Below the pieces are notes generated by a model. It worked only from the letters and a program-made list of their open reading frames with translations, ran no database searches and was not told the origin of the DNA. The position numbers and the translations under genes were made by a program. From positions 62,001-126,000 of IMG/VR virus record IMGVR_UViG_3300021057_000274: DNA of 64,000 bases. One strand, given 5' to 3'. How positions within the stretch are numbered: the first letter of the stretch is position 1; each line of letters begins with the position of its first letter. Of this stretch, positions 3,575 to 61,255 are shown piece after piece.

Positions 3575-3640
3575 TGCAACGGCTATAGGTCGGGTTACTC
3601 CCATCCTTCATGCGAACACTTGGCCTAATCTTCCGTTGCA
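3575..3640 (+). ncRNA. Y-RNA-like structured RNA, copy 2
   Basis: tgcaacgg/ccgttgca outer stem; taggtcgggt/acttggccta inner stem. Confidence 0.55.
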
Positions 3641-3662
3641 AACAATTCTCCACGGAGGCACC

Positions 3663-5876
3663 GTGACACAGCTCTCGAAGAACATCGTCGCCCTGTCCAA
3701 GGGCCTGGTCGTGATCCCGCGGGGATCTGGCCTCAAGATGCAGTTGCGCGAGGACGTATACGCGGCCTCCCTCCAAGCGTCGCTGATGCAGCTCGGCTAC
3801 ATGCTGAGCCGCGAGGCGTACGCCCTCGCCCTCTCGGCGCCGGCCGAGTGGGTCAAGGAGTTCTACGACGAGGCGATCCCGTACCTCAAGGAGGCGGTCG
3901 GGGCGAAGCGCGACTACCGTGCGATGTATCGCAACTTCCCCCAGCAGGTCATGGACCTGTCACACGTCGATCTGTTCATCAACGCGATCACTCACTATTG
4001 GTCAAACGGCCAGTGGGAGCCGCCGCACGAGCTAGCTGAGCGCGGCGTCAAGTTCGAGAGCACCGAGTTCAAGCTGCTGAAGCCGATCGACGAGGCCGGT
4101 TTTCTCAACCTCTTCACCCAGATGGTGGCGATCGGCCAAGCGCTCACTCCTCAAGACCGCAAGATCGTCGAGTGGTTCATCGACTCGGGGCTGAAGCTCA
4201 CCCTGCCAGAGACGATCCCGTTCAAGGAGACCCTGTGCCTGCTCGCTGCGAAGGGTCTCAACGTTCCGGTGAAGACTCCGACCGACGTGCTCCGCATCGC
4301 GGTTCACCTGTCTGGCGGTGACATCTCGCTGCCGGGCATCCCGTCGGCGAAGGTGAAGGCGCCGACCGGTGGCCGCTACTCCTCCGCTCGCTATTGGGAG
4401 ACCTACTATCGAGAGAGCGCCGAGAGAGCCGCGGCCGCCGCGCGCGAAGCGTTCAAGTTCAGGAAGTTCAAGCGACCGCAGCGACGCCTGCTGCTCGAGA
4501 TGCTTGACCGCGTCGCCGACGTCGCCGAGATGCAACGCTACCTCGGCCGCTGGCTCCGTCTGGGTGAGATCCTCCACCCGGGCGAGTTTGCCGGAAAGTT
4601 CCCACGCGCCCACGCGGCGTTCAAGACCCTTCGTAACCAGGAGGGACCAGACACTCGAGTCCGCACGTTCGACGCGCAGGTCAACCTCGCTTTCGCCGCG
4701 AGCGCGAGGGCTGGTTTGAAGGTTTTGACGACCCGGCCGGGCGAGTTCGCTCGCCGCCTGGATTGGCTGCTCCGCACCCATGACGCCGAAGCGGTCATGG
4801 ACGTTTTCACCGAGATCGCGCCGCGAATCAGCTCGAAGGTGCTGTTCGAGCTGTGGACTCACCTGGTCAATCGTGAGACTCCGGGCGCGGCGCGGACGGT
4901 CATGCTCAAGGGTCGCGGCGCGAAGTTTAAGACCCTTCCGACCCTCCCGGCGCTCCCGACCGACGTCGTGCAGCTCGCGACGCGGACGATCGCTAAGGCC
5001 CTCAAGGGCAAGATCAAGGACGCGAAGCTGCCGAGCCTGGGTAACGTTTGGATCGACCCGCAGCTGGCGACCCTGCCGCTGCCAGCGTCGATGCGTGACA
5101 TGAACACCGGTCTCAAGACGTACGTTCGCGGCACCCGTCTGCCGTTCCGCGGGGACGCGAAGGTGGTTCGCGCGTTCGTGCACTGGTACGACGAGGACGG
5201 GACTCAAGACATCGACCTGAGCTTCTCGTTCCACGGCCACAGCCTGGAGGCGATGGGGCACGTCAGCTTCACGAACCTGCGCGAGGGGGCGTGGGCGGTG
5301 CACTCGGGCGACATCCGTCACCGGGTCGGCTCGTGCGCGGAGTACATCGATGTCAACATCGAGAAGGCTCGCCAGCGCGGCGTCCGCTACGTGATGGTGC
5401 ACTGCTACAACTTCAACGGTCGTCCGATGCACACGGTGCCAGAGTGCCGCTTCGGGATGATGGAGCGCGAGCACCAGCGCTCGAACGAGATCTTCGAGGC
5501 GCGCACCGTGACCAACGCGATGCCCCTGATCAACCAGGGCACCACGGTCCTGGCGTGCATTCTCGATCTCCAGGAGCGCTGCATGATCTGGGCGGACATG
5601 GAGGCGGATCGCTACCTGGCGGTCGTTGAGAACACCGCGAGCAAGGCCGCGGAGGCGATCCGCAAGCTGGTGGGTCGTCCTGCGATCTCGGTCGCCGACC
5701 TGCTGCGCATGCACGCCGAGGTGCGCGGCGAGGTGGTGCAAGACGAGGCTCGCGCAGACACGAAGTTCAAGGCCGAGGACCTGACGACGGATTACGTCAC
5801 GATCGCGGGGCTGATGTCCCTCGACGCGCCGGCCAAGAAGGCGCCGGCGTCTAAGCGAGTGAAGATCGCCGCGTAA
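3663..5876 (+). CDS. large protein with C-terminal TerD-like domain (resembles SCO0854/MXAN_6230-type proteins)
   Basis: GGAGG RBS plus GTG; RPGEFARRLDWLLR; C-terminal DIDLS..HSGDI..AEYIDV TerD-like motifs. Confidence 0.7.
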   Translation: MTQLSKNIVALSKGLVVIPRGSGLKMQLREDVYAASLQASLMQLGYMLSREAYALALSAPAEWVKEFYDEAIPYLKEAVGAKRDYRAMYRNFPQQVMDLSHVDLFINAITHYWSNGQWEPPHELAERGVKFESTEFKLLKPIDEAGFLNLFTQMVAIGQALTPQDRKIVEWFIDSGLKLTLPETIPFKETLCLLAAKGLNVPVKTPTDVLRIAVHLSGGDISLPGIPSAKVKAPTGGRYSSARYWETYYRESAERAAAAAREAFKFRKFKRPQRRLLLEMLDRVADVAEMQRYLGRWLRLGEILHPGEFAGKFPRAHAAFKTLRNQEGPDTRVRTFDAQVNLAFAASARAGLKVLTTRPGEFARRLDWLLRTHDAEAVMDVFTEIAPRISSKVLFELWTHLVNRETPGAARTVMLKGRGAKFKTLPTLPALPTDVVQLATRTIAKALKGKIKDAKLPSLGNVWIDPQLATLPLPASMRDMNTGLKTYVRGTRLPFRGDAKVVRAFVHWYDEDGTQDIDLSFSFHGHSLEAMGHVSFTNLREGAWAVHSGDIRHRVGSCAEYIDVNIEKARQRGVRYVMVHCYNFNGRPMHTVPECRFGMMEREHQRSNEIFEARTVTNAMPLINQGTTVLACILDLQERCMIWADMEADRYLAVVENTASKAAEAIRKLVGRPAISVADLLRMHAEVRGEVVQDEARADTKFKAEDLTTDYVTIAGLMSLDAPAKKAPASKRVKIAA

Positions 5877-5880
5877 GTAG

Positions 5881-5910
5881 TTTACTTTTCGCGCGATCTG
5901 TGATTAAATA
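5881..5910 (+). promoter_or_regulatory. sigma70-like early promoter (representative of recurring motif)
   Basis: TTTACT-N~17-TG.TAAAT; similar at 14, 2412, 3399, 9503, 12724, 17270, 29319, 38798. Confidence 0.6.
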
Positions 5911-5996
5911 TCTTCTACCGTAGTGCGAATCCTGGGGTCCCGGGTGGGATCGCCAGCCATCGAGACGATTTTTCAACGAACCAAGTGGAGAACGTT

Positions 5997-6335
5997 ATGA
6001 AGTCCTAGGTTTCCGAACAAAAGCACTGGACGTACTGCTTCCTCCGCGGTGATCTCCCGATCGCCCAGCAGGCGCTCCAAGCCGGACATGCTCTCCTCGA
6101 GCTCGGCATCAAGCACGGCCCGTCGCCCGACGGTCATCCCAGCATCATCTTCCTGGACACAAAGGACAAGCAAGAGCTCGAAGCTGCTCTCGACTTGACG
6201 CGCTCTCACGGGCTCAAGACGTACGAGTTCCACGAGCCGTACAAGAACTGGGGCCTCACGTCGTTCGCGACGCAACCGATTCCGGAAGATCAGCGTCACC
6301 TCTTCAAGCAGTTCAACCTCTGGAGGAAGTCATGA
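5997..6335 (+). CDS. Pth2-like peptidyl-tRNA hydrolase with in-frame TAG at codon 4
   Basis: GGAG RBS, ATG AAG TCC TAG then 108 sense codons; RGDL..QQALQAGHA and EP...LTSFATQP motifs; missed by ORF track. Confidence 0.7.
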
Positions 6336-6478
6336 ACCAGCAGCTCAAGGATAAGCTCGTCGAGTTTCTCGAGTACGCAGCTCAGCGAGAGGAGGACTCG
6401 GACCAAACCAGTGATCACTACGTCAAGTGGGCGCGAGAGCTCGCCGACGAGGTCAAGAGGGAGAAGCTCGATGCGTAA
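6332..6478 (+). CDS. small hypothetical protein
   Basis: ATGA overlap, GGAGG RBS, 48 aa. Confidence 0.6.
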   Translation: MNQQLKDKLVEFLEYAAQREEDSDQTSDHYVKWARELADEVKREKLDA

Positions 6479-6746
6479 GGAGATGACCGAGCTGGAGCTC
6501 AAGTTCGGCTTTGAGCTCGCATGCGAGCTCAAGGAGATCGTGAAGGCGTACGCGAGAGAGCACAAGCCGGCTGACGTCTGGCATCGCCCCTTCGAGGGCG
6601 AGCCCTCACAGGTCGACTTTGACGGAGGGCTAGTCAACGTTAAGTTCAGCCGCTACATCATGGGCTGCAACGAGTACGAGCACCAGGAGTGCTCGTACGG
6701 CGTCGATGACATCATCGAGTGGTACTTCTGGGGGAGCCATGGGTGA
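6471..6746 (+). CDS. hypothetical protein
   Basis: ORF overlapping upstream stop. Confidence 0.65.
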   Translation: MRKEMTELELKFGFELACELKEIVKAYAREHKPADVWHRPFEGEPSQVDFDGGLVNVKFSRYIMGCNEYEHQECSYGVDDIIEWYFWGSHG

Positions 6747-6855
6747 CTTCTCGCGTTGTCCTCACGACGACTTTCTAGGTTACTGCAAGCAGTGCAACCC
6801 TAACCTTTGCCAGGAGTGCTACATGCAACCGTGTGAGTGTGAAGTTCCGCCGTAG
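6739..6855 (+). CDS. Cys-rich 38-aa peptide, in frame with downstream HD gene across TAG
   Basis: GGAG RBS; 7 Cys; TAG at 6853-6855. Confidence 0.55.
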   Translation: MGDFSRCPHDDFLGYCKQCNPNLCQECYMQPCECEVPP

Positions 6856-6882
6856 GTTTCCCTCGATCAGCTGATCGAGCAG

Positions 6883-7482
6883 ATGAAGACGTGCGAGCAG
6901 GCCCGCGGCCTCTCGATCTACCAGCACGGCCTCGACGTGGCCAACCGCTATCGTGACCTCTACGAGTACCTCGAGACAGGAAAGACCGTCTACAAGTGGG
7001 ACATTCCCGAGGAGTCACTTCTCGAGACTCCCGTTCTCTACCGGGTGGCCCTCCCGCCCAAGGACGTGCGCACGTACCACATCTTCCATGATTGCGGCAA
7101 GCCCTACTGTCTAACGATCGACGCTGATGGGAAGAAGCACTTTCCGAACCACGCCGCCGAATCGGCTCGGGTGTTCCGAGAGCTGTTTATCGAGAATCGG
7201 GAGTTCGACGCGACTAAGGACTCTGGATTGCTGCTCATGACCGAGCAGCTCATCAAGCTCGACATGTGGGCGCACACTTGTCGCGGCGAGGAGATCACCG
7301 AGTTTTGCAAGCATCCGCTGGCGCCGACGCTCCTCCTGACGGCTTGGGCCGAGATCCACGCGAACGCCGAGATGTTCGGTGGCTTCGAGTCCACCTCGTT
7401 CAAGATCAAGAGGAAACACCTGGCCAAGGTCACCAGGCGATTGCACGCTTACCTGTGCGAGCAATTAGAGCTACCGAAATAG
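6883..7482 (+). CDS. HD-domain phosphohydrolase-like protein
   Basis: QHGLDV...FHDCGKP...HAAES. Confidence 0.7.
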   Translation: MKTCEQARGLSIYQHGLDVANRYRDLYEYLETGKTVYKWDIPEESLLETPVLYRVALPPKDVRTYHIFHDCGKPYCLTIDADGKKHFPNHAAESARVFRELFIENREFDATKDSGLLLMTEQLIKLDMWAHTCRGEEITEFCKHPLAPTLLLTAWAEIHANAEMFGGFESTSFKIKRKHLAKVTRRLHAYLCEQLELPK

Positions 7483-7495
7483 GTAACCACCTACC

Positions 7496-8278
7496 TCAGA
7501 ACGGAATGTCCTCAAGTTCAGGCTCCTCACGCCGAGGAGCCTGACGTTGCTTTCTCTTGTAGCTGGGACCAGAGGTAAACTCAGGAAAGTCATCAAGATC
7601 AAGCTCCGCGCGCATGAAGCGGTCATGTACTTGCTGCGGAGTTTCGCCGACCCAGACCGGGTCGATGATCACGATCGTGCCGTCATCTCGCATCATGAAG
7701 TTATCCTCCTTGATGTCAGGCGACCAATCGACGTGGAGGCTGATCTCCATGTACGCCTTGCAGAGCGACTTAAACCAAGGTACCCGGTCGAACAGCTCTC
7801 GCTGCTGGATCTTCATGACAGATCCGTCAGGCATGCGGTACTCGATCTTCGGAGCTTCACGATCTAGCTCATCTTTGCCGTGCTCCATGCGGTTGAGCAA
7901 GCTAGACGCGTTCTCGAGATAGTCCGCGATGAAGCGAGCGATCTCGGCGTGAAGCTCTTTGAGCTTCTCGACCTTGATTACCCATAGAAAGTCCTTGCCT
8001 GAGTCCTCGCGAGTGTGAAACTTGTGAAGCTTCAACGGCCGCTTGACAATTTTCGGGTAGTGCTTGCTAGGATGCTTGATGACGAAATCAATAAAGTCAA
8101 GATAGGCCGGATCGTTCTCGATGATCTTGATCACGTAAGGCCACCTGTCGTGAGTGAAGACCTGTCCATACTCTCCGCTCCCGACGAACTTGATCCCGAA
8201 GCGTCTCGCCATCTTGATGAGATCGCCCGTGCTCTTTCCGTGGAAGCGCTTGACGCCGATGAGCTCATTGAGAAGCAT
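7496..8278 (-). CDS. protein kinase-like fold protein
   Basis: GSGEYGQV Gly loop, VIK, DIKEDN catalytic loop, IIDP; TAAATA upstream. Confidence 0.75.
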   Translation of the reverse strand: MLLNELIGVKRFHGKSTGDLIKMARRFGIKFVGSGEYGQVFTHDRWPYVIKIIENDPAYLDFIDFVIKHPSKHYPKIVKRPLKLHKFHTREDSGKDFLWVIKVEKLKELHAEIARFIADYLENASSLLNRMEHGKDELDREAPKIEYRMPDGSVMKIQQRELFDRVPWFKSLCKAYMEISLHVDWSPDIKEDNFMMRDDGTIVIIDPVWVGETPQQVHDRFMRAELDLDDFPEFTSGPSYKRKQRQAPRREEPELEDIPF

Positions 8279-8320
8279 GACAATATTTAAGCGTGTCAGA
8301 TCTTGTGTTATGATCACGAG

Positions 8321-8911
8321 GTGAAACTTTTCATAGACACGGAGTTCTCAGATTTTCTAGATCCCCATCTCATCTCGCTCGGAGCGGTGACCGAGGACCT
8401 CATGAACGAGTACTACGTTGAGATCAGCGACTACGATCGCCGGCTCTCATCGAGCTTCGTCAGAGAGGTCGTCGAGCCCCTCCTCGATCTCCCAAAGCAC
8501 GGCAAGACGTACATGCAAGCCTCGCTCGAGTTCGGCCTCTGGCTGGGTGAGCTCGCTCAAGGATTGCCTGGGGACGAGAAGCTCTACGTCACGGTTGACT
8601 ATGCGACCGACTGGGAGCTGATGCTCGACCTGCTTCAAACTGACCTGAGCCTCCTGCCCAAGGTTAACAAGGCGTTCACTCTGATCAACAATGATCTGCT
8701 CCATCGCGTCGTGATCCGGTGCAGTCAGCTCGCGGTGCCGAACATGAATCAGAAGTGCGAGGGTGCGGCCGAGGCCTTCGGCCAGGGCCTAATGAGCTAC
8801 TTCGTCGAGAACAAGCTTCCGATCCACCACGCTCTCAACGATGCTAAGGCGAACGCTCACGGGTGGCGGAACGCGATGACGTGGATTGAGAAGAACGTGC
8901 ACCCGATCTAG
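8321..8911 (+). CDS. DEDDh 3'-5' exonuclease
   Basis: FIDTEF...D...HHALND. Confidence 0.85.
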   Translation: MKLFIDTEFSDFLDPHLISLGAVTEDLMNEYYVEISDYDRRLSSSFVREVVEPLLDLPKHGKTYMQASLEFGLWLGELAQGLPGDEKLYVTVDYATDWELMLDLLQTDLSLLPKVNKAFTLINNDLLHRVVIRCSQLAVPNMNQKCEGAAEAFGQGLMSYFVENKLPIHHALNDAKANAHGWRNAMTWIEKNVHPI

Positions 8912-9565: not shown

Positions 9566-9643
9566 AGCGGAGTGGAGCAGCCCGGTAGCTCGTTGGCCTC
9601 ATAAGCCAAAGGTCGTTGGTTCGAATCCAACCTCACGCAACCA
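9566..9643 (+). tRNA. tRNA-Met(CAU), initiator-like 1:72 mismatch
   Basis: Cloverleaf, loop CTCATAA, CCA; bulge in acceptor stem. Confidence 0.8.
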
Positions 9644-9762
9644 GCTCAGCACCTTCCCCGAGGTGCAAAGCTAACTAGCGGTGGATCGCTAGCACAATCT
9701 GAAAAATCAGTCGTTTCTCCACCTAAGCACAAACGACCGTCGGACGCTGTAACCGACATTTT

Positions 9763-9836
9763 GCGGGTGTGGTACAATGGTAGCATGCAACCTTGCCAAG
9801 GTTGAGACGAGGGTTCGATTCCCTTCACCCGCTCCA
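9763..9836 (+). tRNA. tRNA-Gly(GCC)
   Basis: Cloverleaf, loop TTGCCAA, U73, CCA. Confidence 0.95.
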
Positions 9837-9899
9837 GTAGGTAGTTGTAAAAGGTCGACCGCCCACATGGGGCGGCGGATTTGAAGGTACCTACGCAGT

Positions 9900-9970
9900 G
9901 CGGGTGTAGCTCAATGGTAGAGCAACTGCCTTCCAAGCAGAAGACGGGGGTCCGATTCCCCTCACCCGCT
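9900..9970 (+). tRNA. tRNA-Gly(UCC), no genomic CCA
   Basis: Cloverleaf, loop CTTCCAA. Confidence 0.9.
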
Positions 9971-9972
9971 CC

Positions 9973-10046
9973 GAGGTTGTCGTCTAAGTGAAGACGCTGG
10001 GGCCCCAAAATCTCCAGAAACGGTGGTTCAAACCCATCCGACCTCG
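9973..10046 (+). ncRNA. tRNA-like RNA with 11-nt anticodon loop
   Basis: gaggttg/cgacctc acceptor, D and T arms; loop GCCCCAAAATC. Confidence 0.6.
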
Positions 10047-10171
10047 CCGATGCTGGAGTTCAAACGCGAAGCCGGTTTCCGGAGCTAGCTCAACCTGAAC
10101 TCGCAGCAGAAGCATCACAGGGTTGGGGGTTTCGCGGACCTCTGTGTTTCAAGAGCTTTGCTGATGCGTCT

Positions 10172-10247
10172 GGGGAAGTAGCTCAGCTGGGAGAGCGCAA
10201 CGTTCGCAACGTTGAGGTCGAGGGTTCGATCCCCTTCTTCTCCACCA
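10172..10247 (+). tRNA. tRNA-Ala(CGC)
   Basis: Cloverleaf, G3-U70, CCA. Confidence 0.95.
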
Positions 10248-10302
10248 CGTTAGTCCCGTAACTAGTACTCGGGACAGTGATCGGTGAGACTCCGATCAAG
10301 TT

Positions 10303-10378
10303 GGGGCCTTAGCTCAGCTGGGAGAGCGTATGCATGGCATGCATAAGGTCAAGGGTTCGATCCCCTTAGGCTCCACCA
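10303..10378 (+). tRNA. tRNA-Ala(GGC)
   Basis: Cloverleaf, G3-U70, loop ATGGCAT. Confidence 0.95.
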
Positions 10379-10506
10379 ATCGCGCACTGAGCGGAGACGC
10401 TTGGGGCGAAAGAGGGTTCAAAGCTGGTGCTGAGAAGTCGGGGTAAGAGCTAACGCCCAACCCGAGAACCTCAGGATGATGCTCGCTTTGATTGCGTTAG
10501 CACCAA

Positions 10507-10581
10507 GCGGAATTAGTTCAGTGGCTAGAACGAGAGCTTCCCAAGCTCAAGACGCGGGTCCGATTCCCGCATTCCGCTCCA
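10507..10581 (+). tRNA. tRNA-Gly(CCC)
   Basis: Cloverleaf, loop TTCCCAA, CCA. Confidence 0.95.
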
Positions 10582-10683
10582 GCGGGGTCGAGAAGTGGAG
10601 AACTAGGAAGAAATTCTGAGGTTCGCATCTCACTGGCCTCATAAGCCAGACAAGGCAGCGTTCAAATCCTGCCCCCGCAACCA
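10582..10683 (+). tRNA. tRNA-Met(CAU)-like with enlarged D loop
   Basis: gcgggg/ccccgc acceptor, CTCATAA loop, CCA; D stem gaga/tctc encloses ~34 nt. Confidence 0.65.
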
Positions 10684-10759
10684 GTAGAAGCCCGCAACGG
10701 GTCTACGCCAACCGGCTTTAAGAAGAAAGGCTGTTAGCCGGTCAGCCTCAAGGAGCAGT

Positions 10760-11587
10760 ATGATGTACAACAACAAGCTCGCCGTGGCGATCCTCAATAA
10801 CGGCCAGGTGTTGCGCGAACGCGGCGACACCGTCTACCTCCCCTTTGGTTCAGAGTACGCCATCCGCGTCAAGAACCTCAACACGACCAAGGCATCGGTC
10901 AAGGTTGAGATCGACGGCAAGGAGGCGACCGAGGGAGTAGCGCTCATCATCGACCCTAACGAGAGCTTCGACCTCGAGCGCTTCATCAAGAACGGCAACC
11001 TCAACCAGGGAAACCGCTTCAAGTTCATCCAGCGCACCGCGGCAGTCGCGAGGCATCGCGGCGTCAGCATCGACGACGGGCTGATCCGCGTCACGTTCCA
11101 GTTCGAGCGTCCCTACGTGCGCCCGAGCACGTGGCCATGGGTTGAACGTCGACGCAGCAGCTGGACTCTCGGCGGCACTCCCTACGGCAGGCGCTCCACC
11201 GACAACGGGAGAAGCTCTTGGACCGCAGGAGGTCTCGGATCAAGCGGGAGCTCTTACAGCGCTAGCGCCTCTAACTCCGTGCTTCGGTCGAAGTCATCAA
11301 CTGTCTACGACGGTGACGCGCAGTGCTCGCTAGAACCAGATCCGGTCGGAGTCACAGCGGCTGGAAGCGTCTCTGACCAGCAGTTTCAAGTCGTCAGCTC
11401 TCTCAATCTCGATCCTCAAGAGCACGTCATGGTGCTCCGCTTGCTCGGAGAGTCCGCCGAGACGAAGATCAAGGTGACGAAGCCGCTGACGGTCAAGTCG
11501 AAGCCCAAGTGCTCCTCGTGCGGCTTGAAGTGCAAGTCGTCCTGGAGATCTTGTCCGCGATGCAGCACTAGCCTCGAGATCGTCTAG
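10760..11587 (+). CDS. hypothetical protein with C-terminal zinc ribbon
   Basis: GGAG RBS; CSSC..CPRC. Confidence 0.8.
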   Translation: MMYNNKLAVAILNNGQVLRERGDTVYLPFGSEYAIRVKNLNTTKASVKVEIDGKEATEGVALIIDPNESFDLERFIKNGNLNQGNRFKFIQRTAAVARHRGVSIDDGLIRVTFQFERPYVRPSTWPWVERRRSSWTLGGTPYGRRSTDNGRSSWTAGGLGSSGSSYSASASNSVLRSKSSTVYDGDAQCSLEPDPVGVTAAGSVSDQQFQVVSSLNLDPQEHVMVLRLLGESAETKIKVTKPLTVKSKPKCSSCGLKCKSSWRSCPRCSTSLEIV

Positions 11588-11985
11588 TGGGAAGCCGAAG
11601 CCAGCGGCGACGCGATCGCCTCGGAATCCGGGCGACCGGACACACTCCTGAGGGAAAGCAGGTCATGGGCGGGATGTTCAAGCTCGTCAACGAGCACGGC
11701 GTGCCGCTCTCGATCCTGCTCTTCAAGCTTGACGAGAGCGGTTGCGTTCTAGACTGGCAAGACTTCGTGCAAGACGCTCTAGAAGCAGGTTGGACGATCA
11801 AGGGTCTCACCTCACGGGTTGAGGAAGCTCTGATCGACAGCTCGTACAACAAGATCTCGCGTGACGAGATCTTGAGCAGGTTGAAGTTACTCGTCGTAAA
11901 GCTCTACGCCGAGACACAAGAAAGTGAAAAATTCCATGCCAAAGCGCATAAACATCAAGCCGGTCAAGAAGACCAAAACTCCTAA
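11587..11985 (+). CDS. hypothetical protein with AlaRS-helical-domain-like motif
   Basis: FKLVNEHGVPL..E..LD...F resembles AlaRS FRLYDTYGFP motif. Confidence 0.5.
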   Translation: MGSRSQRRRDRLGIRATGHTPEGKQVMGGMFKLVNEHGVPLSILLFKLDESGCVLDWQDFVQDALEAGWTIKGLTSRVEEALIDSSYNKISRDEILSRLKLLVVKLYAETQESEKFHAKAHKHQAGQEDQNS

Positions 11986-12679
11986 GCTCACTCGCATCCT
12001 CTTCGTTCTCGACGAGTCGACCTCGATGGGATCGGTTCGCAACGAGACGATCGCAGGTTTCAACACCTTCCTCGAGGAGCAAAAGAAGATCAAGGGGAAG
12101 GCGACGATGACCCTAGTCAAGTTCAGCTCGGCCCCAAAGATGGTCTTCTCGAACGTTCCGATCGAGCACGTCCAACCGCTCGATCACACGACGTTCACCC
12201 CAAACGGATGGACGGCGCTCTACGACGCGGTCGGCGATGCGATCACGAGCTGCGGTGACCTCAAGCCGAAGGGCGTCAAGACGATCCTCGCGATCCTGAC
12301 CGACGGCGAGGAGAACAAGAGCTATCGCTTCTCGTTCGAGCGCATCACGGCGATGCTCAAGGAGTGCCAGGGCAACCCGAGCGAGCCCTGCGCAGATGAC
12401 TGGGAGGTGCTCTACCTCGGGTCACAGATGGGTGCGCGCCAAACCGCGATCGACATGGGCATCAAGCTCCAGAACGTCGCCGCGTTCGACGTCGGCGCCA
12501 AGGGCATGTCCGACGCGATCAAGACGATGTCGGCGACGGCCTCGTCCTACCGCGGAATCGACCAGAACATCGGTGGAGTCTTCTACGCCGCCGGCGCGGT
12601 AGACACCCAAGCGATGTACGAGACGATCAAGAAGGAGATCACGACCACAACCGTAACGACGAAGAAGGCCGACAAGTAA
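11936..12679 (+). CDS. von Willebrand factor A domain protein
   Basis: LDESTSM MIDAS, TALYDA, TDGEEN. Confidence 0.9.
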   Translation: MPKRINIKPVKKTKTPKLTRILFVLDESTSMGSVRNETIAGFNTFLEEQKKIKGKATMTLVKFSSAPKMVFSNVPIEHVQPLDHTTFTPNGWTALYDAVGDAITSCGDLKPKGVKTILAILTDGEENKSYRFSFERITAMLKECQGNPSEPCADDWEVLYLGSQMGARQTAIDMGIKLQNVAAFDVGAKGMSDAIKTMSATASSYRGIDQNIGGVFYAAGAVDTQAMYETIKKEITTTTVTTKKADK

Positions 12680-12687
12680 CGAAAGCT

Positions 12688-12715
12688 TTCGGGGAGGCTC
12701 GCGAGCCTCCCCGAA
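12688..12715. terminator. GC-rich hairpin, probable terminator
   Basis: 13-bp perfect inverted repeat after vWA stop. Confidence 0.55.
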
Positions 12716-12757
12716 GCCCGCGGTTTACCTCTCGCGTCTCTCATGATATAATTTCTC

Positions 12758-13708
12758 ATGAGCAATTCCTACAACCTTCAATTTCAGAAGGATCGGACCT
12801 TTCTCAAGGCCTACATGTTGGGGAGAGGATACTCCCTCGGGCTCAAGGCTCTCGGCTTCTCAGAGCGACACCACACCGGACTCAGGAAGGACAAGCAGAC
12901 CCCGGAGTTTCATCACCAGGTTCAGATCGCTCTCTCGGTTCTCGATCTCAAGGGGCTCATCAACGAGGAGCTCGCGATCGTCATCGCTCTCCTCCATGAC
13001 GTTCAGGAGGATCACCGCGTTCCGACCGAGGCGATCCGCCGCGAGTTTGGCGACGATGTCGCCTCCGTCAACTGGAAGATGACCAAGAAGTTTGTCGAGA
13101 CCGACGGCACGCTCACGGTCAAGGACAGAGAAGCTTACATCATCGATCTCTCACTTGACGCGACTGGTTCGATCGTCAAGGGGCTTGACCGAGTCAACAA
13201 TCTTCAGACGATGATCGGCGTCTTCACCGTCGAGAAGATGCAGAGCTACGCCGACGAGGCGGAGACGATCTTCCTCCCGATGCTGAAGAAGGCGTCGAAG
13301 CACTTCCCCGAACAACATCACGCGTATCAGGCCGTGCAGCAAACGATGAAGCGCCAGCTCAAGTGGATTCGCGCTTACATCGACTTGCACCAGCGCCTCG
13401 AAGCTCACATCGATCATGTCGAGATGGAGCACGAGGCAACGATCGTAGAGCGAAACGCGGCGCTAAAGACGAACGCTGATTTGCGTCACTTCACAGAAAC
13501 TCTTCAAGAGAAAAATCGAGGACTCGCAGAGATTGCCGCCAAAGGGGTGACGGAAATAAACCGCGCGCTGATTCGTGCCGTTGCTAAAGCGCTTCTCGAG
13601 AACCGCGTGACAGGTGACAAGCATGACAGCGTCTTACAGCGTCTTGCATGGCGTCATGCGCGAGCTGGGCATCTCCGAGCTCGAGATGATCCAATTTCGC
13701 GACGATAA
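12758..13708 (+). CDS. HD-domain (p)ppGpp hydrolase-like (RelA/SpoT HD) protein with coiled-coil tail
   Basis: H.G.RK...P..H, LLHDVQED, K..DRVNN; possible indel near 13645. Confidence 0.8.
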   Translation: MSNSYNLQFQKDRTFLKAYMLGRGYSLGLKALGFSERHHTGLRKDKQTPEFHHQVQIALSVLDLKGLINEELAIVIALLHDVQEDHRVPTEAIRREFGDDVASVNWKMTKKFVETDGTLTVKDREAYIIDLSLDATGSIVKGLDRVNNLQTMIGVFTVEKMQSYADEAETIFLPMLKKASKHFPEQHHAYQAVQQTMKRQLKWIRAYIDLHQRLEAHIDHVEMEHEATIVERNAALKTNADLRHFTETLQEKNRGLAEIAAKGVTEINRALIRAVAKALLENRVTGDKHDSVLQRLAWRHARAGHLRARDDPISRR

Positions 13709-13800
13709 GGTGAGCGGAGACATCAACCAGACCTAACTTTCCTATCTCCCAGCGGCGGCCAGGTTAAATAAGAGGGCCAACTAAAGCTCGGAGATGTGAA

Positions 13801-14208
13801 TTGAAGCTAAACGAACTTAAGGCCGCGATGATCCAGCGGTTCTTTAAGAGCACCAACGGTCTAGGTGACGATCGTCTCGACGAGATCCTAGGGTCTCTAG
13901 GGACCGCGATCACAGAGGAGATCGACAGCTTCTTGACCGTTGGAAGCTCCGAGTCGCATGAGGCTAGCAAAGCCTTCAGTCGATTCATCTCGGGTGACCG
14001 GGCCTTCCTCACCGTCTGCGAGGAGGAGGGCCACAAGAACAAGATCTTCTTCGCGGCGCTCAGGTCAGGAAAGAAGATCTCCTACGTCGACCTGTCGGAC
14101 GGTGAGATCAAGGTTGAGCTAGGTACCTTCGCGCAGATCAAGGAAGCTCTCAAGCAAGCTCAAGCGCTCAACGACGACATCTTCTTTGAGATCGCGGTCG
14201 AGGGATGA
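13801..14208 (+). CDS. hypothetical, putative virion internal protein
   Basis: TAAATA 13765; MKLNEL. Confidence 0.7.
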   Translation: MKLNELKAAMIQRFFKSTNGLGDDRLDEILGSLGTAITEEIDSFLTVGSSESHEASKAFSRFISGDRAFLTVCEEEGHKNKIFFAALRSGKKISYVDLSDGEIKVELGTFAQIKEALKQAQALNDDIFFEIAVEG

Positions 14209-15635
14209 GGATCACCGAGGTTTACCGGCGCAAGACTACCCCCGAGGGGTGGATCGAGATCGGCGAGATCGGCCGGACGATCTTTGGTCAACAAAATCAG
14301 TACTTCGCTCGATACTTCGAGATGCCCGAGATCGTCAAGGACCTGCGGGTGAACGGCGACCCCGCCGACTATCACAGCTGGTCGATCCACCCCGACGACA
14401 AGGACAAGTTCGTTGAGCGCGTGAGAGAGCATTCAAAGAGCAAGGGACTAGCTGAAGCCGACACCCCACCTTCACCCAAGCCGGAAGATCCAGTCAAGCA
14501 GGAGATCAAAGCTGAGGTTACTAAGCGAACGGGGTCGGCGCGCACCAACTTTGCTCAAGAGTACCAGCGACGCTCCGCTCGCCAGGCAGAGATCAACGAG
14601 CTGAGCAAGCAAGGCACCTCCGAGCTCAACATCAAGGAGGCGATCATCAAGATCGCCGAGGACGATAACAAGGCCTACCCCCAGTTTCACGGCAAGTGGA
14701 AGGGCAAGGACTGGCGCGTGATGCGGTGCAACCACCGCGTCAAGACGAAGGGTTACCCAGCCGCCGAGAGGGGGGACCTCGTGCTAGCCAAGAAGGAGCC
14801 TGCGCAGGAGCACGAAAAGCACAAGGGCGACGAGCGTGTCACCTTCTACTCGATCCGGAACGCCGTTGACACGATCAGCATGAAGGCTAAGTCATTCGTG
14901 CCGCTCTCTACCGTGACAGAGAGTAAGACTGAGATCAAGAAGCTCTTTAAGAAGGGTGGCTTCTTAAAGTGGAACAACATCACGAACAAAGAAGCTCGCG
15001 AAGCAGGAATCGCACCTAACGACCTAGTACCTGCGACTTTGAATCAAACTTACGACAAGAAGATCTTGGGGCTTCGCATCGACGGACGGCCTTATCTTCT
15101 CAACGAGGGTCATCCCGGCTTCGACAGCTACTACACGGTGCGACGTGCAGGAGGCTATGAGGAGTACGAGGTCGCGAAGTTCTCGGACCGCAAGGAGCCT
15201 GAGTACGTCGAGTGGGTCAAGAAGAAGGACGACAAGAACTTTGAGTCATCCTCTCACAGCTTCCGCAAGATGGGGCAGCTTGACAAGTCGATCGTCATCG
15301 TCAAGCAGTTCATCGCGGACGGTGAGCCTGACCTCGTCTACTACACCGTCGAGGAGAAGCCAAAGCGTCACGCGGTGAAGCACAAGATGGGCGGCGAGGG
15401 CCCGCAGCCAGACATGTTCTCAGAGGGAAGGTTGGGAGATCTTCAGGCAGAGCTCACTAGACTGAAGGTACCTAGCTTTCACATGAACGCCGTCATGAAC
15501 GCGGCGACGCAAGCCTCCTCCTACACCGATTTCGTCAGCATGCTCAGAAAACGCGAGCTTCTCCTGAAGCACGGCAACGAGGGGATGGAGGAGATCTACC
15601 GCACCGTACGCTCGATGATGAAGAGGACCTCATGA
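14205..15635 (+). CDS. hypothetical, putative virion internal protein
   Basis: 476-aa ORF, MRITE start, coupled. Confidence 0.8.
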   Translation: MRITEVYRRKTTPEGWIEIGEIGRTIFGQQNQYFARYFEMPEIVKDLRVNGDPADYHSWSIHPDDKDKFVERVREHSKSKGLAEADTPPSPKPEDPVKQEIKAEVTKRTGSARTNFAQEYQRRSARQAEINELSKQGTSELNIKEAIIKIAEDDNKAYPQFHGKWKGKDWRVMRCNHRVKTKGYPAAERGDLVLAKKEPAQEHEKHKGDERVTFYSIRNAVDTISMKAKSFVPLSTVTESKTEIKKLFKKGGFLKWNNITNKEAREAGIAPNDLVPATLNQTYDKKILGLRIDGRPYLLNEGHPGFDSYYTVRRAGGYEEYEVAKFSDRKEPEYVEWVKKKDDKNFESSSHSFRKMGQLDKSIVIVKQFIADGEPDLVYYTVEEKPKRHAVKHKMGGEGPQPDMFSEGRLGDLQAELTRLKVPSFHMNAVMNAATQASSYTDFVSMLRKRELLLKHGNEGMEEIYRTVRSMMKRTS

Positions 15636-16138
15636 AGCTTAAGACTGTCTTGACCGAAGCCCCGAAGTGGACAAAGCACCCGACTCGCAAGGGGGTACTG
15701 ACTCGCACGATCTCACCTGAAGAGCGGAAGCGTGAGGAGGAAAAGGAATCTGCTCCCAAGAAGAGCGCGAGCAACGAGCAGAAGTGGCTCCAACCGATTC
15801 CTGAGCTGGACGTCTCGGAGATCAAGAAGGCGTGCAAGAACGGAGGTAATGACATCGGCGCCGAGATCGAGGAGGCCACGCGAGGGCAATCCTTCGTCAA
15901 GGAGGTCACGTACGATCCTGAGCACATCGGGGTCCCTGAAGCGAAGCGGAAGTATAAGTTCAAGAGTGACAGCGACATGCCGAAGCGCAAGGTCGCAGCC
16001 GTCAAGTATGACCTCTTCGTCTACTACGACGCGAAGGAAGCTGGGATCGAGACCGACGCCGATCACGTCGAAGAGATGGTGAAGATCATCATCTATCGTG
16101 ATCCGATTAACCCGAAGCGCTTGATCGGAACGTACTAA
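15632..16138 (+). CDS. hypothetical, putative virion internal protein
   Basis: MKLKTVLTE start. Confidence 0.75.
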   Translation: MKLKTVLTEAPKWTKHPTRKGVLTRTISPEERKREEEKESAPKKSASNEQKWLQPIPELDVSEIKKACKNGGNDIGAEIEEATRGQSFVKEVTYDPEHIGVPEAKRKYKFKSDSDMPKRKVAAVKYDLFVYYDAKEAGIETDADHVEEMVKIIIYRDPINPKRLIGTY

Positions 16139-16139
16139 G

Positions 16140-16697
16140 TTGAAGTTCAAAGCTTTTCTCGCTGAGTCGGTCACCTTCGGCGCGACGATCCATCGCGTAG
16201 AGAAGGACGGGCAGCGCTCGCATGACTTCACTCCGTTCGAGAAGGAGAAGGAGATCGACTGTCGTGAGTGCCACTACCACGGCAAGTCCGAGCACTGCTG
16301 GATGTGCAAGGGAACGGGAAAGGAGAAGGTTTGGGTGACCGACTACGACAAGATTCAGCTCTCAAACTCGGGCGCGCTCGCCTTCTTGAGCGCGATCGGT
16401 GAGAAGGTCAACGGCGACGAGAGCTTAGTCGGCGGGTGGGATAACTCGGAGCTCCCTGAGCTCCGACGGAGGCTCATTCGGATGAAGAACGGCGACCTAA
16501 AGCACCATGAGACGCCACCGAGCGATGAGCAGCGCGTCCGCGGGGTCAAGCATGACGGAAACGTAGCGACGATCGAGCGCGGCCCTCGCATGATCAGTTA
16601 CGGACGAACCGCCGCACAGTACGGCGAGCTGATCGACGACTTGCTCAAGCTCATCGACTTCGCTCAGAAGCACGACGCAGGAGTGAGCTGGGCATGA
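16140..16697 (+). CDS. hypothetical with CxxC..CxxCxGxG zinc finger
   Basis: MKFKAFLAE start; CREC..CWMCKGTG. Confidence 0.75.
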   Translation: MKFKAFLAESVTFGATIHRVEKDGQRSHDFTPFEKEKEIDCRECHYHGKSEHCWMCKGTGKEKVWVTDYDKIQLSNSGALAFLSAIGEKVNGDESLVGGWDNSELPELRRRLIRMKNGDLKHHETPPSDEQRVRGVKHDGNVATIERGPRMISYGRTAAQYGELIDDLLKLIDFAQKHDAGVSWA

Positions 16698-17263: not shown

Positions 17264-17325
17264 ATTTCATTTACTTTTGAGTGATTTTGAGTTAAAATGC
17301 CTCTATTGCTACTTCGGAGGCGAAC

Positions 17326-17987: not shown

Positions 17988-18049
17988 TTCACAAGAACTA
18001 ACGGCAGTGTTTACAAGCTACTAGATTCCGATTACAATTACTCCAAGTT

Positions 18050-18422: not shown

Positions 18423-18532
18423 AAATTGCACAAAGTTGTTTACAAGCGAGGGAGACTGTGATACCATCGCTCTTCGAGTTGCACATGATTAACCTTTTCG
18501 GAAAATTGAGCACCGGTATAAATACCAGCACA

Positions 18533-18718: not shown

Positions 18719-18748
18719 GGAGTCAAGCGGTTGAAGTTGTAGCACGAT

Positions 18749-19100: not shown

Positions 19101-19103
19101 CCT

Positions 19104-60995: not shown

Positions 60996-61180
60996 GGCTA
61001 CGTTGGAATTGTGTCACTTCGTTTTTCAGTGCTTTCAAGACATCGATGTAGAGGCGATCCTTTACTTAGTGTTAGCTGGGATATTTGGAAGCGTGCTTAC
61101 TATGACTTTAAACCGAGAGAAAAGATGAGAATTGAGTAGAAAAGCGGCGAGATCTGTGATATAATCTCTCTACTTTAACT

Positions 61181-61255
61181 GCTCCCTTAGCTCAGCGGCA
61201 GAGTACGGGACTCTAAATCCTAGGGTCGTGGGTTCGAATCCCACAGGGAGCACCA
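61181..61255 (+). tRNA. amber-suppressor tRNA (anticodon CUA)
   Basis: Cloverleaf, loop CTCTAAA, A73, CCA; own TGATATAAT promoter. Confidence 0.88.

What the first reader, a model, noticed from the sequence alone, without database searches (positions are those of the whole stretch)
6739..7482. Second TAG-GTT-TCC junction fuses a Cys-rich peptide to the HD protein
Seen: the 38-aa, 7-Cys ORF ends in TAG (6853-55) followed by GTT TCC, the same 9-nt context as in the Pth2 gene 850 nt upstream. The frame continues (VSLDQLIEQ) into the HD ORF, whose ATG has no clear RBS. Inference: a shared readthrough signal co-regulates two genes of one operon.
Basis: partly seen in the sequence, partly recalled or inferred. 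Interest (0 to 1): 0.75.

Follow-up and report, generated by a model that had tools for sequence, protein, structure and literature searches.

The report
Amber-gated tRNA-enzyme genes in jumbo phage
Two neighbouring genes for tRNA-handling enzymes in this giant soil phage each start behind an in-frame TAG stop codon that the phage's own amber-suppressor tRNA most likely reads through. The same arrangement recurs in about 75 other large phages, which would give these puzzling suppressor tRNAs their first identified targets.

Summary
TAGGTTTCC occurs at 6006-6014 and 6853-6861, both times as an in-frame stop in front of a coding body. These are its only two copies in the 389-kb genome.

The 9-nt motif is not the signal. 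Two copies is what chance predicts, and relatives do not conserve the motif. Only a purine after TAG is constant.

The window belongs to a soil jumbo phage with 48 tRNA genes. One is an amber suppressor, tRNA-CUA, at 61181-61255. TAG still ends about 19% of genes, so the code is not reassigned.

What is conserved is a gate: SD, ATG, 0-7 codons (usually 1-2), TAG, then the body. It fronts a Pth2-fold gene in 74 of 103 distinct homologous loci, including Serratia BF, GAP32, CBB, ME3, RsoM2USA and Arash. A suppressor tRNA usually lies within 3 kb.

The HD gene resembles the HD part of CCA/A-adding enzymes. Homology and a confident predicted helix extend upstream of Met 6883 to the TAG. Relatives carry TAG at three different places in this gene.

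Best explanation: translation of both enzymes depends on the phage suppressor tRNA. A Cys-peptide-HD fusion is possible but is not the conserved feature. The purpose of the gate is inferred only. I found no prior description.

The parts
5881..5909 (+). Promoter-like site of the operon: TTTACT, 17 nt, then TG-n-TTAAAT (extended -10)
   Evidence: Read. One search shows a near-identical GATCTGTGAT(A/T)(T/A)AAT box in front of the tRNA-CUA gene and at several other places in the genome. The strict consensus scan did not call it.
5987..6008 (+). Gate 1: SD GGAG (5987-5990), ATG 5997, AAG, TCC, TAG 6006-6008 (leader M-K-S-stop)
   Evidence: The same SD-ATG-(0-7 codons, usually 1-2)-TAG architecture occurs in 74 of 103 distinct homologous loci.
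6009..6335 (+). Pth2-fold (peptidyl-tRNA hydrolase 2-like) body, 108 codons plus TGA. No ATG/GTG/TTG before codon 63.
   Evidence: AF2 model pLDDT 93. The Foldseek top 14 hits are all Pth2 structures, TM 0.65-0.75. Pfam PTH2 matches 8 of 10 relatives, best E 2.8e-6. PDB profile hit 2zv3, E 1.4e-3.
6332..6746 (+). Two small ORFs of the operon (48 aa at 6332-6478; 91 aa at 6471-6746). Good coding signal, no homologues found.
6739..6855 (+). Cys-rich 38-aa ORF ending in the gate TAG. Weak coding signal. Its last 10 codons start at an in-frame ATG 6823 preceded by AGGAG 6812-6816.
   Evidence: No homologue in the fetched loci. RsoM2USA also has a Cys-rich ORF ending at the HD gate TAG, but there an SD-ATG-AAA-TCG leader lies just before the TAG.
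6853..6855 (+). Gate 2: in-frame TAG, 10 codons upstream of the conserved Met of the HD protein
   Evidence: TAG sits at exactly this alignment column in RsoM2USA, L037, L042 and L059.
6856..7482 (+). HD-domain protein, 208 codons from the TAG (199 from ATG 6883). Its own stop is TAG 7480-7482.
   Evidence: Alignment A3 shows conserved H...HD...H...D residues and homology from the first codon after TAG. AF2 pLDDT 92, with residues 3-12 forming a confident helix. The best fold matches are class II tRNA nucleotidyltransferases 3wfo-3wfs (sequence profile hit).
7518..7544 (+). Terminator-like hairpin closing the operon, shared with the convergent gene on the - strand
61151..61165 (+). Extended -10 promoter box (GATCTGTGATATAAT) of the suppressor tRNA gene
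61181..61255 (+). Amber-suppressor tRNA: anticodon CUA, class I, A73, encoded CCA. The only suppressor among the genome's 48 tRNA genes.
   Evidence: ARAGORN. Rfam tRNA model 65.4 bits, E 2e-13. Its nearest relatives among 274 compared tRNAs are other phage tRNA-CUA genes.

Best explanation
The window comes from a standard-code jumbo phage of a soil metagenome. The phage encodes its own amber-suppressor tRNA (anticodon CUA, 61181-61255). Two genes of one operon (about 5881-7544) are 'amber-gated'. Ribosomes start at a short leader: SD-ATG-AAG-TCC for the Pth2-like gene, and for the HD gene either the Cys-rich ORF or its last 10 codons from ATG 6823. They meet UAG almost at once. They make the enzyme only if the suppressor tRNA decodes that UAG in competition with release factor 1. 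Otherwise only a tiny peptide is released. Both gated products act on tRNA 3' ends by inference from their folds. One is a Pth2-fold esterase. The other is an HD phosphohydrolase that resembles the HD part of CCA/A-adding enzymes. Shown here: the anatomy, its conservation, the genomic linkage to suppressor tRNAs, and the folds. Inferred: that suppression occurs, which amino acid is inserted, and the purpose of the gate. My preferred purpose is that the gate ties the dose and timing of two potentially dangerous tRNA-end enzymes to the amount of functional, charged phage tRNA. A negative-feedback loop on the suppressor itself is an alternative.
For: (1) A suppressor tRNA is present. It is a well-formed tRNA-CUA with its own promoter-like box.
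(2) The Pth2-like body cannot be made in any other way. It has no start codon for 62 codons after the TAG, and its first beta-strand begins at residue 6.
(3) The gate is conserved. All 10 homologues in isolated or uncultured phage records have it: BF, fHe-Yen9-03, RsoM2USA, ME3, Arash, XbC2, CBB, CM1, LR756511 and the window. Across phage records, IMG/VR and metagenome contigs, 74 of 103 distinct 5' regions are TAG-gated, and 3 more are HD-Pth2 fusions gated at their start. Of 46 distinct gated 5' regions in the phage-record and IMG/VR set, 44 have an ATG no more than 11 codons upstream, and 37 of those 44 have an SD-like site.
(4) Linkage. 40 of 61 IMG/VR loci have a suppressor tRNA within 3 kb on the same strand. 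All eight phage genomes checked carry a tRNA-CUA: the window's own, ME3, Arash, RsoM2USA, XbC2, GAP32, CBB and BF.
(5) One case of covariation. L022 has M-E-S-TGA at the gate and a tRNA-UCA 266 nt upstream.
(6) HD gene. Homologues align from the first codon after the TAG, and those residues form a helix with pLDDT above 90. TAG sits at the same column in four other lineages. It sits at two further internal positions in other lineages, and ME3, Arash and L017 have none. This pattern is what repeated selection for amber dependence would produce.
(7) In this genome only these two sites combine an SD-ATG short leader, TAG followed by a purine, and a strongly coding body.
(8) TAG remains a normal terminator for 119 of 624 crude gene calls, and in-frame TAGs with coding flanks are not enriched. 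The recoding is therefore gene-specific.
Against: There is no direct evidence of readthrough: no proteomics, Ribo-seq or reporter data exist for this uncultured phage. The suppressor's amino-acid identity is unknown. The tRNA-CUA lies 54 kb from the gated genes in this genome. The closest relative of the Pth2-like gene (L105, 67% identity) has TAA at the gate, L141 also has TAA, and L183 has TGA. Their contigs are too short or not held, so I could not check for matching suppressors. A CUA anticodon would not read UAA. Only one gate-anticodon covariation case could be verified, and in it GTG/TTG codons follow the TGA. For HD, ATG 6883 could still serve as an independent, weaker start. The catalytic Lys/Asp pair that I recall for Pth2 aligns with Gln/Glu here, so the biochemical activity may differ from peptidyl-tRNA hydrolysis.
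Confidence: 0.8

Rival explanations
1. For the HD gene only: TAG 6853 simply terminates the Cys-rich ORF, and HD is translated independently from ATG 6883. The in-frame continuity is incidental.
For: ATG 6883 exists and corresponds to a Met conserved in most homologues. All HD metal-binding residues lie downstream of it. Some relatives (ME3, Arash, L017) have ungated HD genes with their own ATG.
Against: There is no SD before ATG 6883, and a hairpin covers that stretch. The 9 codons between TAG and ATG have normal coding statistics. They align with N-terminal residues of homologues that start further upstream, and they form a confident helix. TAG lies exactly 10 codons before that Met in four other lineages, each with an SD-ATG-(1-2 codons) leader.
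Confidence: 0.12
2. One reading: a specific 9-nt context (TAG-GTT-TCC) makes host tRNAs read through the stop, with no dedicated suppressor.
For: The identical hexamer follows both TAGs. Within-genome near-identity of the two post-TAG hexamers also appears in RsoM2USA and L059, at 5 of 6 bases.
Against: The motif's count equals chance. It is not conserved in relatives, where the codon after TAG is ATT, GTT, AAT, AAC, GAA and others. No downstream structure is present. A cognate suppressor tRNA is encoded in the genome and is linked to the module in relatives.
Confidence: 0.04
3. Termination-reinitiation: the leader is a mini-ORF, and ribosomes that terminate at TAG restart at a non-canonical codon just downstream.
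For: The leader is formally a minigene. ATT, the most common codon after TAG, is a known weak start codon in E. coli (my own knowledge). Gates with TAA and TGA also exist.
Against: In the window no ATG, GTG, TTG, ATT, ATC, ATA or CTG occurs between TAG and the first beta-strand. The codons after TAG include AAT, AAC, GAA and ACC, which cannot pair with initiator tRNA. This model does not explain the linkage to suppressor tRNAs.
Confidence: 0.03
4. The TAGs are sequencing errors or mark decaying pseudogenes.
For: None beyond the presence of a stop codon.
Against: Contigs of two DNA runs are identical, though they may be the source samples. The gate is kept in 74 distinct lineages at 27-67% protein identity, with intact, well-folding bodies.
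Confidence: 0.01

Closest known systems
Stop-codon recoding in phages with phage-encoded suppressor tRNAs (Lak megaphages, crAss-like phages; TAG to Gln, TGA to Trp; Borges et al. preprint 10.1101/2021.08.26.457843)
   Same: A phage-encoded suppressor tRNA decodes in-frame stop codons, and gene expression is conditional on that tRNA.
   Different: There, dozens to hundreds of in-frame stops occur, mainly in late and lytic genes, and the codon is largely abandoned as a terminator, mostly in low-GC genomes. Here, a 58% GC standard-code genome ends about 19% of its genes with TAG. Only two genes are gated, at codons 2-11, and both encode tRNA-handling enzymes.
Suppressor tRNAs of standard-code jumbo phages with no known target (XacN1, PMC5852040; phiKp24, PMC8386662)
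   Same: The same kind of phage, and XacN1 has an HD homologue. A tRNA-CUA sits among a large tRNA set.
   Different: Those papers state that no target gene or purpose could be found. In the XacN1 study, the in-silico read-through extended annotated ORFs past their terminal amber codons. That approach cannot detect a 3-codon leader that was never annotated.
E. coli prfB (RF2) autoregulation through an early in-frame UGA
   Same: A gene of the translation apparatus carries an early in-frame stop codon. The competition between termination and recoding at that stop sets the gene's own expression.
   Different: prfB uses +1 frameshifting at CUU-UGA with an internal SD, and the codon senses RF2 itself. 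Here there is no frameshift site. The body continues in the same frame, and the sensed quantity would be suppressor tRNA versus RF1. The comparison rests on my own knowledge.
Lambda bar-type minigenes and early peptidyl-tRNA drop-off (PMC2490762, PMC10192219)
   Same: SD-AUG-(1-3 codons)-stop is the minigene architecture. Its abortive products are short peptidyl-tRNAs, which are the substrates of peptidyl-tRNA hydrolases.
   Different: Minigenes are stand-alone and toxic when Pth is limiting. Here the minigene is fused in frame to a Pth2-fold gene. Any autoregulatory meaning is speculation.
Archaeal/eukaryotic Pth2 (PF01981; PDB 2zv3, 1q7s, 1xty)
   Same: The same fold (TM 0.65-0.75) and the conserved R-x-D-L ... 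Q-x-x-H-A core.
   Different: Identity is 14-20%. The window protein gets no Pfam hit. The loop that carries the catalytic Lys is shortened, and Gln/Glu stand at the positions I recall as Lys/Asp.
HD domain of class II tRNA nucleotidyltransferases (CCA/A-adding enzymes; PDB 3wfo-3wfs)
   Same: These are the best sequence-profile and fold matches. The H...HD...H...D metal-ligand pattern is shared.
   Different: This is a stand-alone 208-aa protein without the nucleotidyltransferase head. The scores are modest (E 1.5e-3, TMq 0.58), and no Pfam HD hit was obtained.

Membership tests
Phage stop-codon recoding by an encoded suppressor tRNA | In-frame stop codon inside a conserved coding sequence | tested here: met
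   TAG at 6006 and 6853. Homology and fold extend across or up to the TAG.
Phage stop-codon recoding by an encoded suppressor tRNA | Cognate suppressor tRNA encoded by the same genome | tested here: met
   tRNA-CUA at 61181-61255. All eight phage genomes checked, this one included, carry one.
Phage stop-codon recoding by an encoded suppressor tRNA | Genome-wide or block-wide reassignment, with the codon largely abandoned as a terminator | tested here: not met
   TAG ends 119 of 624 crude gene calls. In-frame TAGs with coding flanks are not enriched over TGA or TAA.
Phage stop-codon recoding by an encoded suppressor tRNA | Demonstrated insertion of an amino acid at the stop | not testable with these tools
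   The phage is uncultured and has no proteome or Ribo-seq data. The only hint is that an internal HD TAG in L010 and L012-14 aligns with a conserved Trp.
   In 34 distinct contexts only the +4 purine is constant. The motif's genome count equals chance.
   z-scores range from -1.4 to +0.4, and the two sites share no structure.
PTH2 peptidyl-tRNA hydrolase (PF01981) | Pth2 alpha/beta fold | tested here: met
   Foldseek top 14 hits are all Pth2, probability 1.0, TM 0.65-0.75.
PTH2 peptidyl-tRNA hydrolase (PF01981) | Significant match to the family HMM | tested here: inconclusive
   The window protein has no hit at E<=10. Eight of 10 relatives hit, best E 2.8e-6. PDB profile hit at E 1.4e-3.
PTH2 peptidyl-tRNA hydrolase (PF01981) | Catalytic Lys and Asp (recalled from S. 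solfataricus Pth2 studies) | tested here: inconclusive
   In the profile alignment to 2zv3, Gln20 and Glu76 occupy those columns and the GKGK loop is shorter. The residue roles are recalled from memory and were not tested.
HD-domain metal-dependent phosphohydrolases | H...HD...H...D metal-ligand motif | tested here: met
   H24, H78-D79, H99 and D136 are invariant, and H95 is nearly invariant, in alignment A3.
HD-domain metal-dependent phosphohydrolases | Match to the Pfam HD model / HD fold | tested here: inconclusive
   No Pfam hit. Fold matches to the HD-containing 3wfo-3wfs have probability 1.0 and TMq 0.58. Generic HD hydrolases match at lower TM.
bar-type minigene | SD, AUG, 1-3 sense codons, stop | tested here: met
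   GGAG-N6-ATG-AAG-TCC-TAG. Leader lengths are 1-3 codons including ATG in 26 of 34 distinct contexts.
bar-type minigene | Peptidyl-tRNA drop-off and toxicity when Pth is limiting | not testable with these tools
   Needs experiments.

The most novel reading that the evidence does not exclude
Jumbo phages carry a self-contained 'suppressor-licensed tRNA-maintenance module'. An amber-suppressor tRNA has as its dedicated, conserved targets the genes for two enzymes that act on tRNA 3' ends: a Pth2-fold esterase and a CCA-enzyme-like HD hydrolase. The gate sits at codons 2-4, so failed suppression costs only a di- or tripeptide. The tRNA then acts as a molecular reporter of tRNA integrity, charging or RF1 competition. 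It feeds forward, or back, onto the enzymes that service the phage's large tRNA pool or that counter host toxins attacking tRNA ends. This would explain why standard-code phages keep suppressor tRNAs at all.
Probability: 0.3. Interest if true: 0.9.

Novelty: new variant of a known kind. Interest (0 to 1): 0.8.

Why it matters
Many large phages that use the standard code carry suppressor tRNAs, and their purpose has been stated to be unknown (PMC5852040, PMC8386662). This finding offers concrete, conserved and testable targets. It also shows that two gene families are systematically mis-annotated. In GenBank records the Pth2-like gene is missing or truncated and the HD gene is split in two. PHROGs holds only fragments of them. 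A gate at the second to fourth codon is a compact natural design for making a protein strictly dependent on one tRNA, which is of interest for translational control and synthetic biology. The pairing of a suppressor tRNA with enzymes for tRNA 3' ends points to undescribed phage control of the tRNA pool. It may also be a counter-measure against host systems that attack tRNA ends.

Tried and rejected
- Genome-wide TAG reassignment was rejected. ORF-length statistics and a codon-usage model show TAG ending about 19% of genes, with no excess of in-frame TAGs.
- Further amber-gated genes in this genome were not found. The scan for SD-ATG-short leader-stop-coding body gave 5 TAG, 5 TGA and 5 TAA hits, which is background apart from the two sites in question.
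- Two other TAG candidates were followed and dropped. At genome 148990 (a DnaJ-domain ORF, then a 509-aa ORF), homologues of the downstream ORF align only from residue 25, and a GTG is available. At genome 376612 on the minus strand (a ferredoxin), a GTG lies before the Fer4 domain.
- Amino-acid identity of the suppressor could not be settled. Nearest-neighbour comparison with 209 labelled phage tRNAs gave no isotype. Other tRNA-CUA genes are the closest at 0.72-0.78, followed by Val, Thr, Arg and Lys at no more than 0.74.
- Homologues of the Cys-rich ORF and the two small ORFs: none found in the fetched loci.
- Pfam scans of single proteins gave nothing. Hits came only with relatives or profiles.
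- The predicted Pth2-like/HD complex gave no answer, with a score of 0.00. It is not evidence either way.
- Fetching the rest of the metagenome contigs with TAA or TGA gates failed because the records are not held.
I rebuilt the alignment from IMG/VR loci as A2.
A1 was used instead.
- A stimulatory RNA structure after the TAGs was not supported.
Full report
OBSERVATION. A 38-codon, 7-Cys ORF starts at ATG 6739 and ends in TAG 6853-6855, followed by GTT TCC. The frame stays open through nine codons (VSLDQLIEQ) to ATG 6883 and on to the stop at 7480-7482. The same nine bases lie at 6006-6014, 847 nt upstream on the same strand. There the layout is GGAG (5987-5990), 6 nt, ATG 5997, AAG, TCC, TAG, and then a 108-codon body whose next in-frame ATG/GTG/TTG is 62 codons further on (6195). 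TAGGTTTCC occurs only at these two places in the window and in the whole 389,331-bp genome, on either strand. One to 2.3 copies are expected by chance. The count is therefore ordinary; the placement is not.

The window is part of a single-contig virus record of 389 kb that was assembled from soil metagenomes. It carries 48 tRNA genes, 41 of them in the window. One has the anticodon CUA (61181-61255). It is a regular class I tRNA: Rfam 65 bits, A73, encoded CCA, and a TG-n-TATAAT box 16 nt upstream. This is an amber suppressor. The genome has not reassigned TAG. A codon-usage gene model gives 624 genes ending in TGA (345), TAA (160) or TAG (119). In-frame TAGs flanked by coding sequence are no more common than in-frame TGA or TAA. 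A scan for 'SD, ATG, short leader, stop, coding body' returns five hits for each stop codon. Among the TAG hits only the two sites in question combine a purine after TAG with a strongly coding body. The Pth2-like gene is the only case of a long, start-less coding body behind a TAG.

THE GATE IS CONSERVED. tblastn against phage records finds the two genes side by side in about 25 large phages. In several records the Pth2-like gene is not annotated at all, and the HD gene is annotated as two pieces.

All ten records read in frame show the same thing: a Shine-Dalgarno site, ATG, one or two further codons, TAG, and then the body with no start codon. The leaders are M-T-H-TAG (Serratia BF), M-S-H-TAG (Yersinia fHe-Yen9-03), M-L-TAG (Ralstonia RsoM2USA, Salmonella Arash), M-T-TAG (Acinetobacter ME3), M-A-H/Q-TAG (XbC2, CBB), M-T-H-TAG (an uncultured 595-kb phage) and M-K-S-TAG here. 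In Stenotrophomonas CM1 the HD and Pth2-like parts are fused, and M-K-TAG heads the fusion.

IMG/VR gave 61 loci and metagenome contigs gave 80 more. After removing duplicates there are 103 distinct 5' regions, which fall as follows:
- 74 are TAG-gated: no ATG/GTG/TTG between TAG and the conserved Y-x-F-V-R-x-D strand, and an ATG no more than 11 codons upstream.
- 3 are gated HD-Pth2 fusions.
- 2 are gated with TAA.
- 1 is gated with TGA.
- 22 have an ordinary start codon available.
- 1 is unclassified: a TAG with no nearby upstream ATG.

Of 46 distinct gated regions in the first set, 44 have the leader ATG, and 37 of those 44 have an SD-like site. Two are simply ATG-TAG.

THE HD GENE. They do. 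The nine residues after the TAG align with the N-terminal helix of homologues that start further upstream at their own ATG, for example MIYPNTFEELLQVM, MEILTFDKVLKDM and MYATNFDDLQTRM. In the AlphaFold model, residues 3-12 form a helix with pLDDT above 90.

TAG lies exactly ten codons before the conserved Met in RsoM2USA, L037, L042 and L059 as well, each with an SD-ATG-(1-2 codons) leader. Other lineages carry the TAG inside the gene: after ELDTG in the BF/CBB/GAP32/Yersinia group, and after DLPP in L010 and L012-14. ME3, Arash and L017 have none. Three different positions in one family argue for repeated selection of amber dependence rather than a single frozen accident.

In the window the nearest in-frame ATG before the TAG is at 6823, preceded by AGGAG at the right distance. 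The leader may therefore be ten codons long or the whole 38-codon Cys-rich ORF. That ORF has the weakest coding signal of the operon and no detectable homologue.

LINKAGE TO SUPPRESSOR tRNAs. In ME3 a tRNA-CUA lies about 0.4 kb upstream of the gate. In Arash one lies 0.5 kb downstream of the HD gene, where it is annotated as tRNA-Phe. Forty of the 61 IMG/VR loci have a suppressor tRNA within 3 kb, always on the same strand and often in two or three copies. RsoM2USA, XbC2, GAP32, CBB and BF each carry one 3-13 kb away.

In L022 the gate is M-E-S-TGA and the neighbouring tRNA has the anticodon UCA. That is one case of covariation, weakened by GTG/TTG codons after the TGA. Ungated family members also sit beside suppressor tRNAs, so the tie between the enzyme and suppressor tRNAs is wider than the gate.

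A caveat: the closest relative of the window's gene (L105, 67% identity) has TAA at the gate. Its contig is short and is not held, so whether an ochre suppressor accompanies it remains open.

THE CONTEXT. In 34 distinct leader-context combinations the base after TAG is A (21) or G (13), never C or T. Ordinary terminal TAGs of this genome are followed by A 47, T 30, G 21 and C 21. The codon after TAG is ATT, GTT, AAT, AAC and a few others. GTT TCC encodes the N-terminal Val-Ser, and L042 has the same hexamer. A purine 3' of an amber codon favours suppression in E. coli (my recollection of the classic context studies). Amino-acid conservation could give the same pattern. Neither TAG is followed by a significant RNA structure.

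One oddity remains. Within a genome, the hexamers after the two gates agree at 6 of 6 bases here and at 5 of 6 in RsoM2USA and L059, but not in L037, L042 or L044.

WHAT THE PROTEINS ARE. The first body is a Pth2-fold protein. The model has pLDDT 93, and the 14 best PDB matches are all archaeal or human Pth2. Pfam PTH2 matches 8 of 10 relatives, and a profile hits 2zv3. It is divergent, however. The window protein itself gets no Pfam hit, and the columns I recall as the catalytic Lys and Asp hold Gln and Glu.

The second is an HD-type hydrolase with the H...HD...H...D ligands conserved. Its best sequence and fold matches are the HD-containing part of class II tRNA nucleotidyltransferases 3wfo-3wfs. 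Both therefore point to tRNA 3' ends. Three lineages fuse the two proteins, which suggests a joint function. A complex prediction gave no answer.

OPERON. A TTTACT-17-TGnTTAAAT promoter-like site lies at 5881-5909. It closely resembles the box in front of the tRNA-CUA gene. A terminator-like hairpin lies at 7518-7544. Contigs of two DNA runs are identical over 5800-7600, and a 154-nt metatranscriptome contig matches 7206-7359. The latter shows presence in an RNA library, not proven transcription.

MECHANISM AND RIVALS. The best-supported reading is gene-specific programmed amber suppression. Ribosomes load on the leader, and the body is made only when the phage tRNA-CUA beats RF1 at the UAG. 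Placing the gate at codons 2-4 means that a failed attempt costs only a tiny peptide.

The leader is also formally a minigene, whose abortive product is a short peptidyl-tRNA. That is the substrate class of peptidyl-tRNA hydrolases (PMC2490762, PMC10192219). Any autoregulatory meaning of this is speculation.

The purpose is inferred. The likeliest is that the gate couples the amount or timing of two tRNA-end enzymes to the level of functional phage tRNA. Alternatives are feedback on the suppressor itself, or a link to counter-defence against host enzymes that attack tRNA ends.

The rivals are an independent start of HD at Met 6883, context-only readthrough by host tRNAs, termination-reinitiation, and pseudogenes. 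Each is weighed in its own section of this report. None explains the conserved leader, the start-less body and the tRNA linkage together.

COMPARISON AND NOVELTY. Phage suppressor tRNAs and stop-codon recoding are known (preprint 10.1101/2021.08.26.457843). They are described as genome-wide or block-wide reassignment of late genes in low-GC phages. For standard-code jumbo phages the literature I could search says the targets are unknown. The XacN1 authors read through 18 terminal amber codons and found nothing (PMC5852040). The phiKp24 authors leave the role open (PMC8386662). Six searches of the held library found no description of an amber-gated Pth2-like or HD gene. Subscription journals are not covered, so prior description cannot be excluded. 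I rate this a new variant of a known kind.

Noticed in passing
window 7480-7578: The HD gene's own terminator is also TAG followed by G (TAG GTA ACC). A 31-codon open extension runs to TAA 7576-7578 across the terminator hairpin. With an amber suppressor present, some HD protein would be C-terminally extended.
   Followed up: no
window 60147-63263: The suppressor tRNA sits among RNA-repair-like genes: an AAA_28 P-loop protein (60147-60995), a weak 2H-phosphoesterase match (61270-61986, E 1.2e-3, below the Pfam cutoff) and a Macro-domain protein (62622-63263).
   Followed up: partly
window 3413, 5895, 32531, 61151 (and genome 34318, 36480, 45923, 326541): A recurring sigma-70-like promoter with an extended -10 box (TGTGATATAAT-like, often with TTTAC at -35) precedes the 746-aa ORF, the Pth2-like operon, the tRNA-CUA and other genes. 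It may mark one temporal class.
   Followed up: partly
L105:2975-3330 (metagenome contig Ga0315287_10001793): The closest relative of the Pth2-like gene (67% identity) has the same leader architecture but with TAA (M-Q-P-F-S-TAA-V-A-E-Q-H-W). It has no HD gene next to it, and a Gly/Met/Ala tRNA array downstream as in the window. L141 also has a TAA gate and L183 a TGA gate.
   Followed up: partly
L022:2725-3030 (IMG/VR): The gate is M-E-S-TGA, and a tRNA with anticodon UCA lies 266 nt upstream. Gate codon and suppressor anticodon have changed together.
   Followed up: partly
L001, L003, L002, L006, L007, L005 (GenBank records KY630187, LT960552, MG752970, OP292654, KU574722, OQ632216): Annotation errors caused by the gate. 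The Pth2-like gene is unannotated (BF, fHe-Yen9-03, RsoM2USA) or truncated (CBB, XbC2, Arash, where a 50-aa piece is called 'peptidyl-tRNA hydrolase'). The HD gene is split into two CDS in the BF/CBB/XbC2 group. Arash's tRNA-CUA is annotated as tRNA-Phe. PHROGs holds the fragments as phrog_34073 (77 positions) and phrog_26054 (46 positions).
   Followed up: yes
L008 (Stenotrophomonas CM1), L065, L069: The HD and Pth2-like proteins are fused into one ORF (HD first), with the TAG gate at codon 3-5 of the fusion.
   Followed up: partly
L010, L012-L014 (IMG/VR), HD gene: An internal TAG of the HD gene (after DLPP) aligns with a Trp that is conserved in about ten other lineages (Tyr in one). This hints that the suppressor there inserts Trp or another tolerated residue.
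   Followed up: partly
window 6856-6861 vs 6009-6014; L002; L059: Within a genome, the six bases after the Pth2-like gate and the HD gate agree at 6 of 6 (window) or 5 of 6 (RsoM2USA, L059). They differ between genomes and do not agree in L037, L042 or L044. Unexplained.
   Followed up: partly
window 9570-28108: A dense array of 40 tRNA genes on the + strand. It includes a 93-nt 'tRNA-Asn' (19194-19286) that may be a mis-call or may carry an insertion, and a 73-nt 'tRNA-Ser(tga)' without the long variable arm expected of Ser.
   Followed up: no
window 3636-5876, 7496-8317 (-), 8303-8911: Neighbours of the operon: a 746-aa protein of an unknown phage family (phrog_33734), a protein-kinase-like gene on the opposite strand (phrog_15752, T7 gp0.7-type annotation) and an RNase H/exonuclease-like gene (phrog_2259).
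   Followed up: no
genome 376612 (- strand; L104) and genome 148990 (L103): Two further in-frame TAG-purine sites: M-T-T-S-T-S-G-G-TAG in front of a 2x[4Fe-4S] ferredoxin, and a DnaJ-domain ORF ending in TAG in frame with a 509-aa ORF that contains a K-L-D-G motif. In both a GTG start is available, and homology gave no support for readthrough.
   Followed up: partly
window 7206-7359: A 154-nt contig from a soil metatranscriptome library is identical to part of the HD gene. DNA carry-over cannot be excluded.
   Followed up: no
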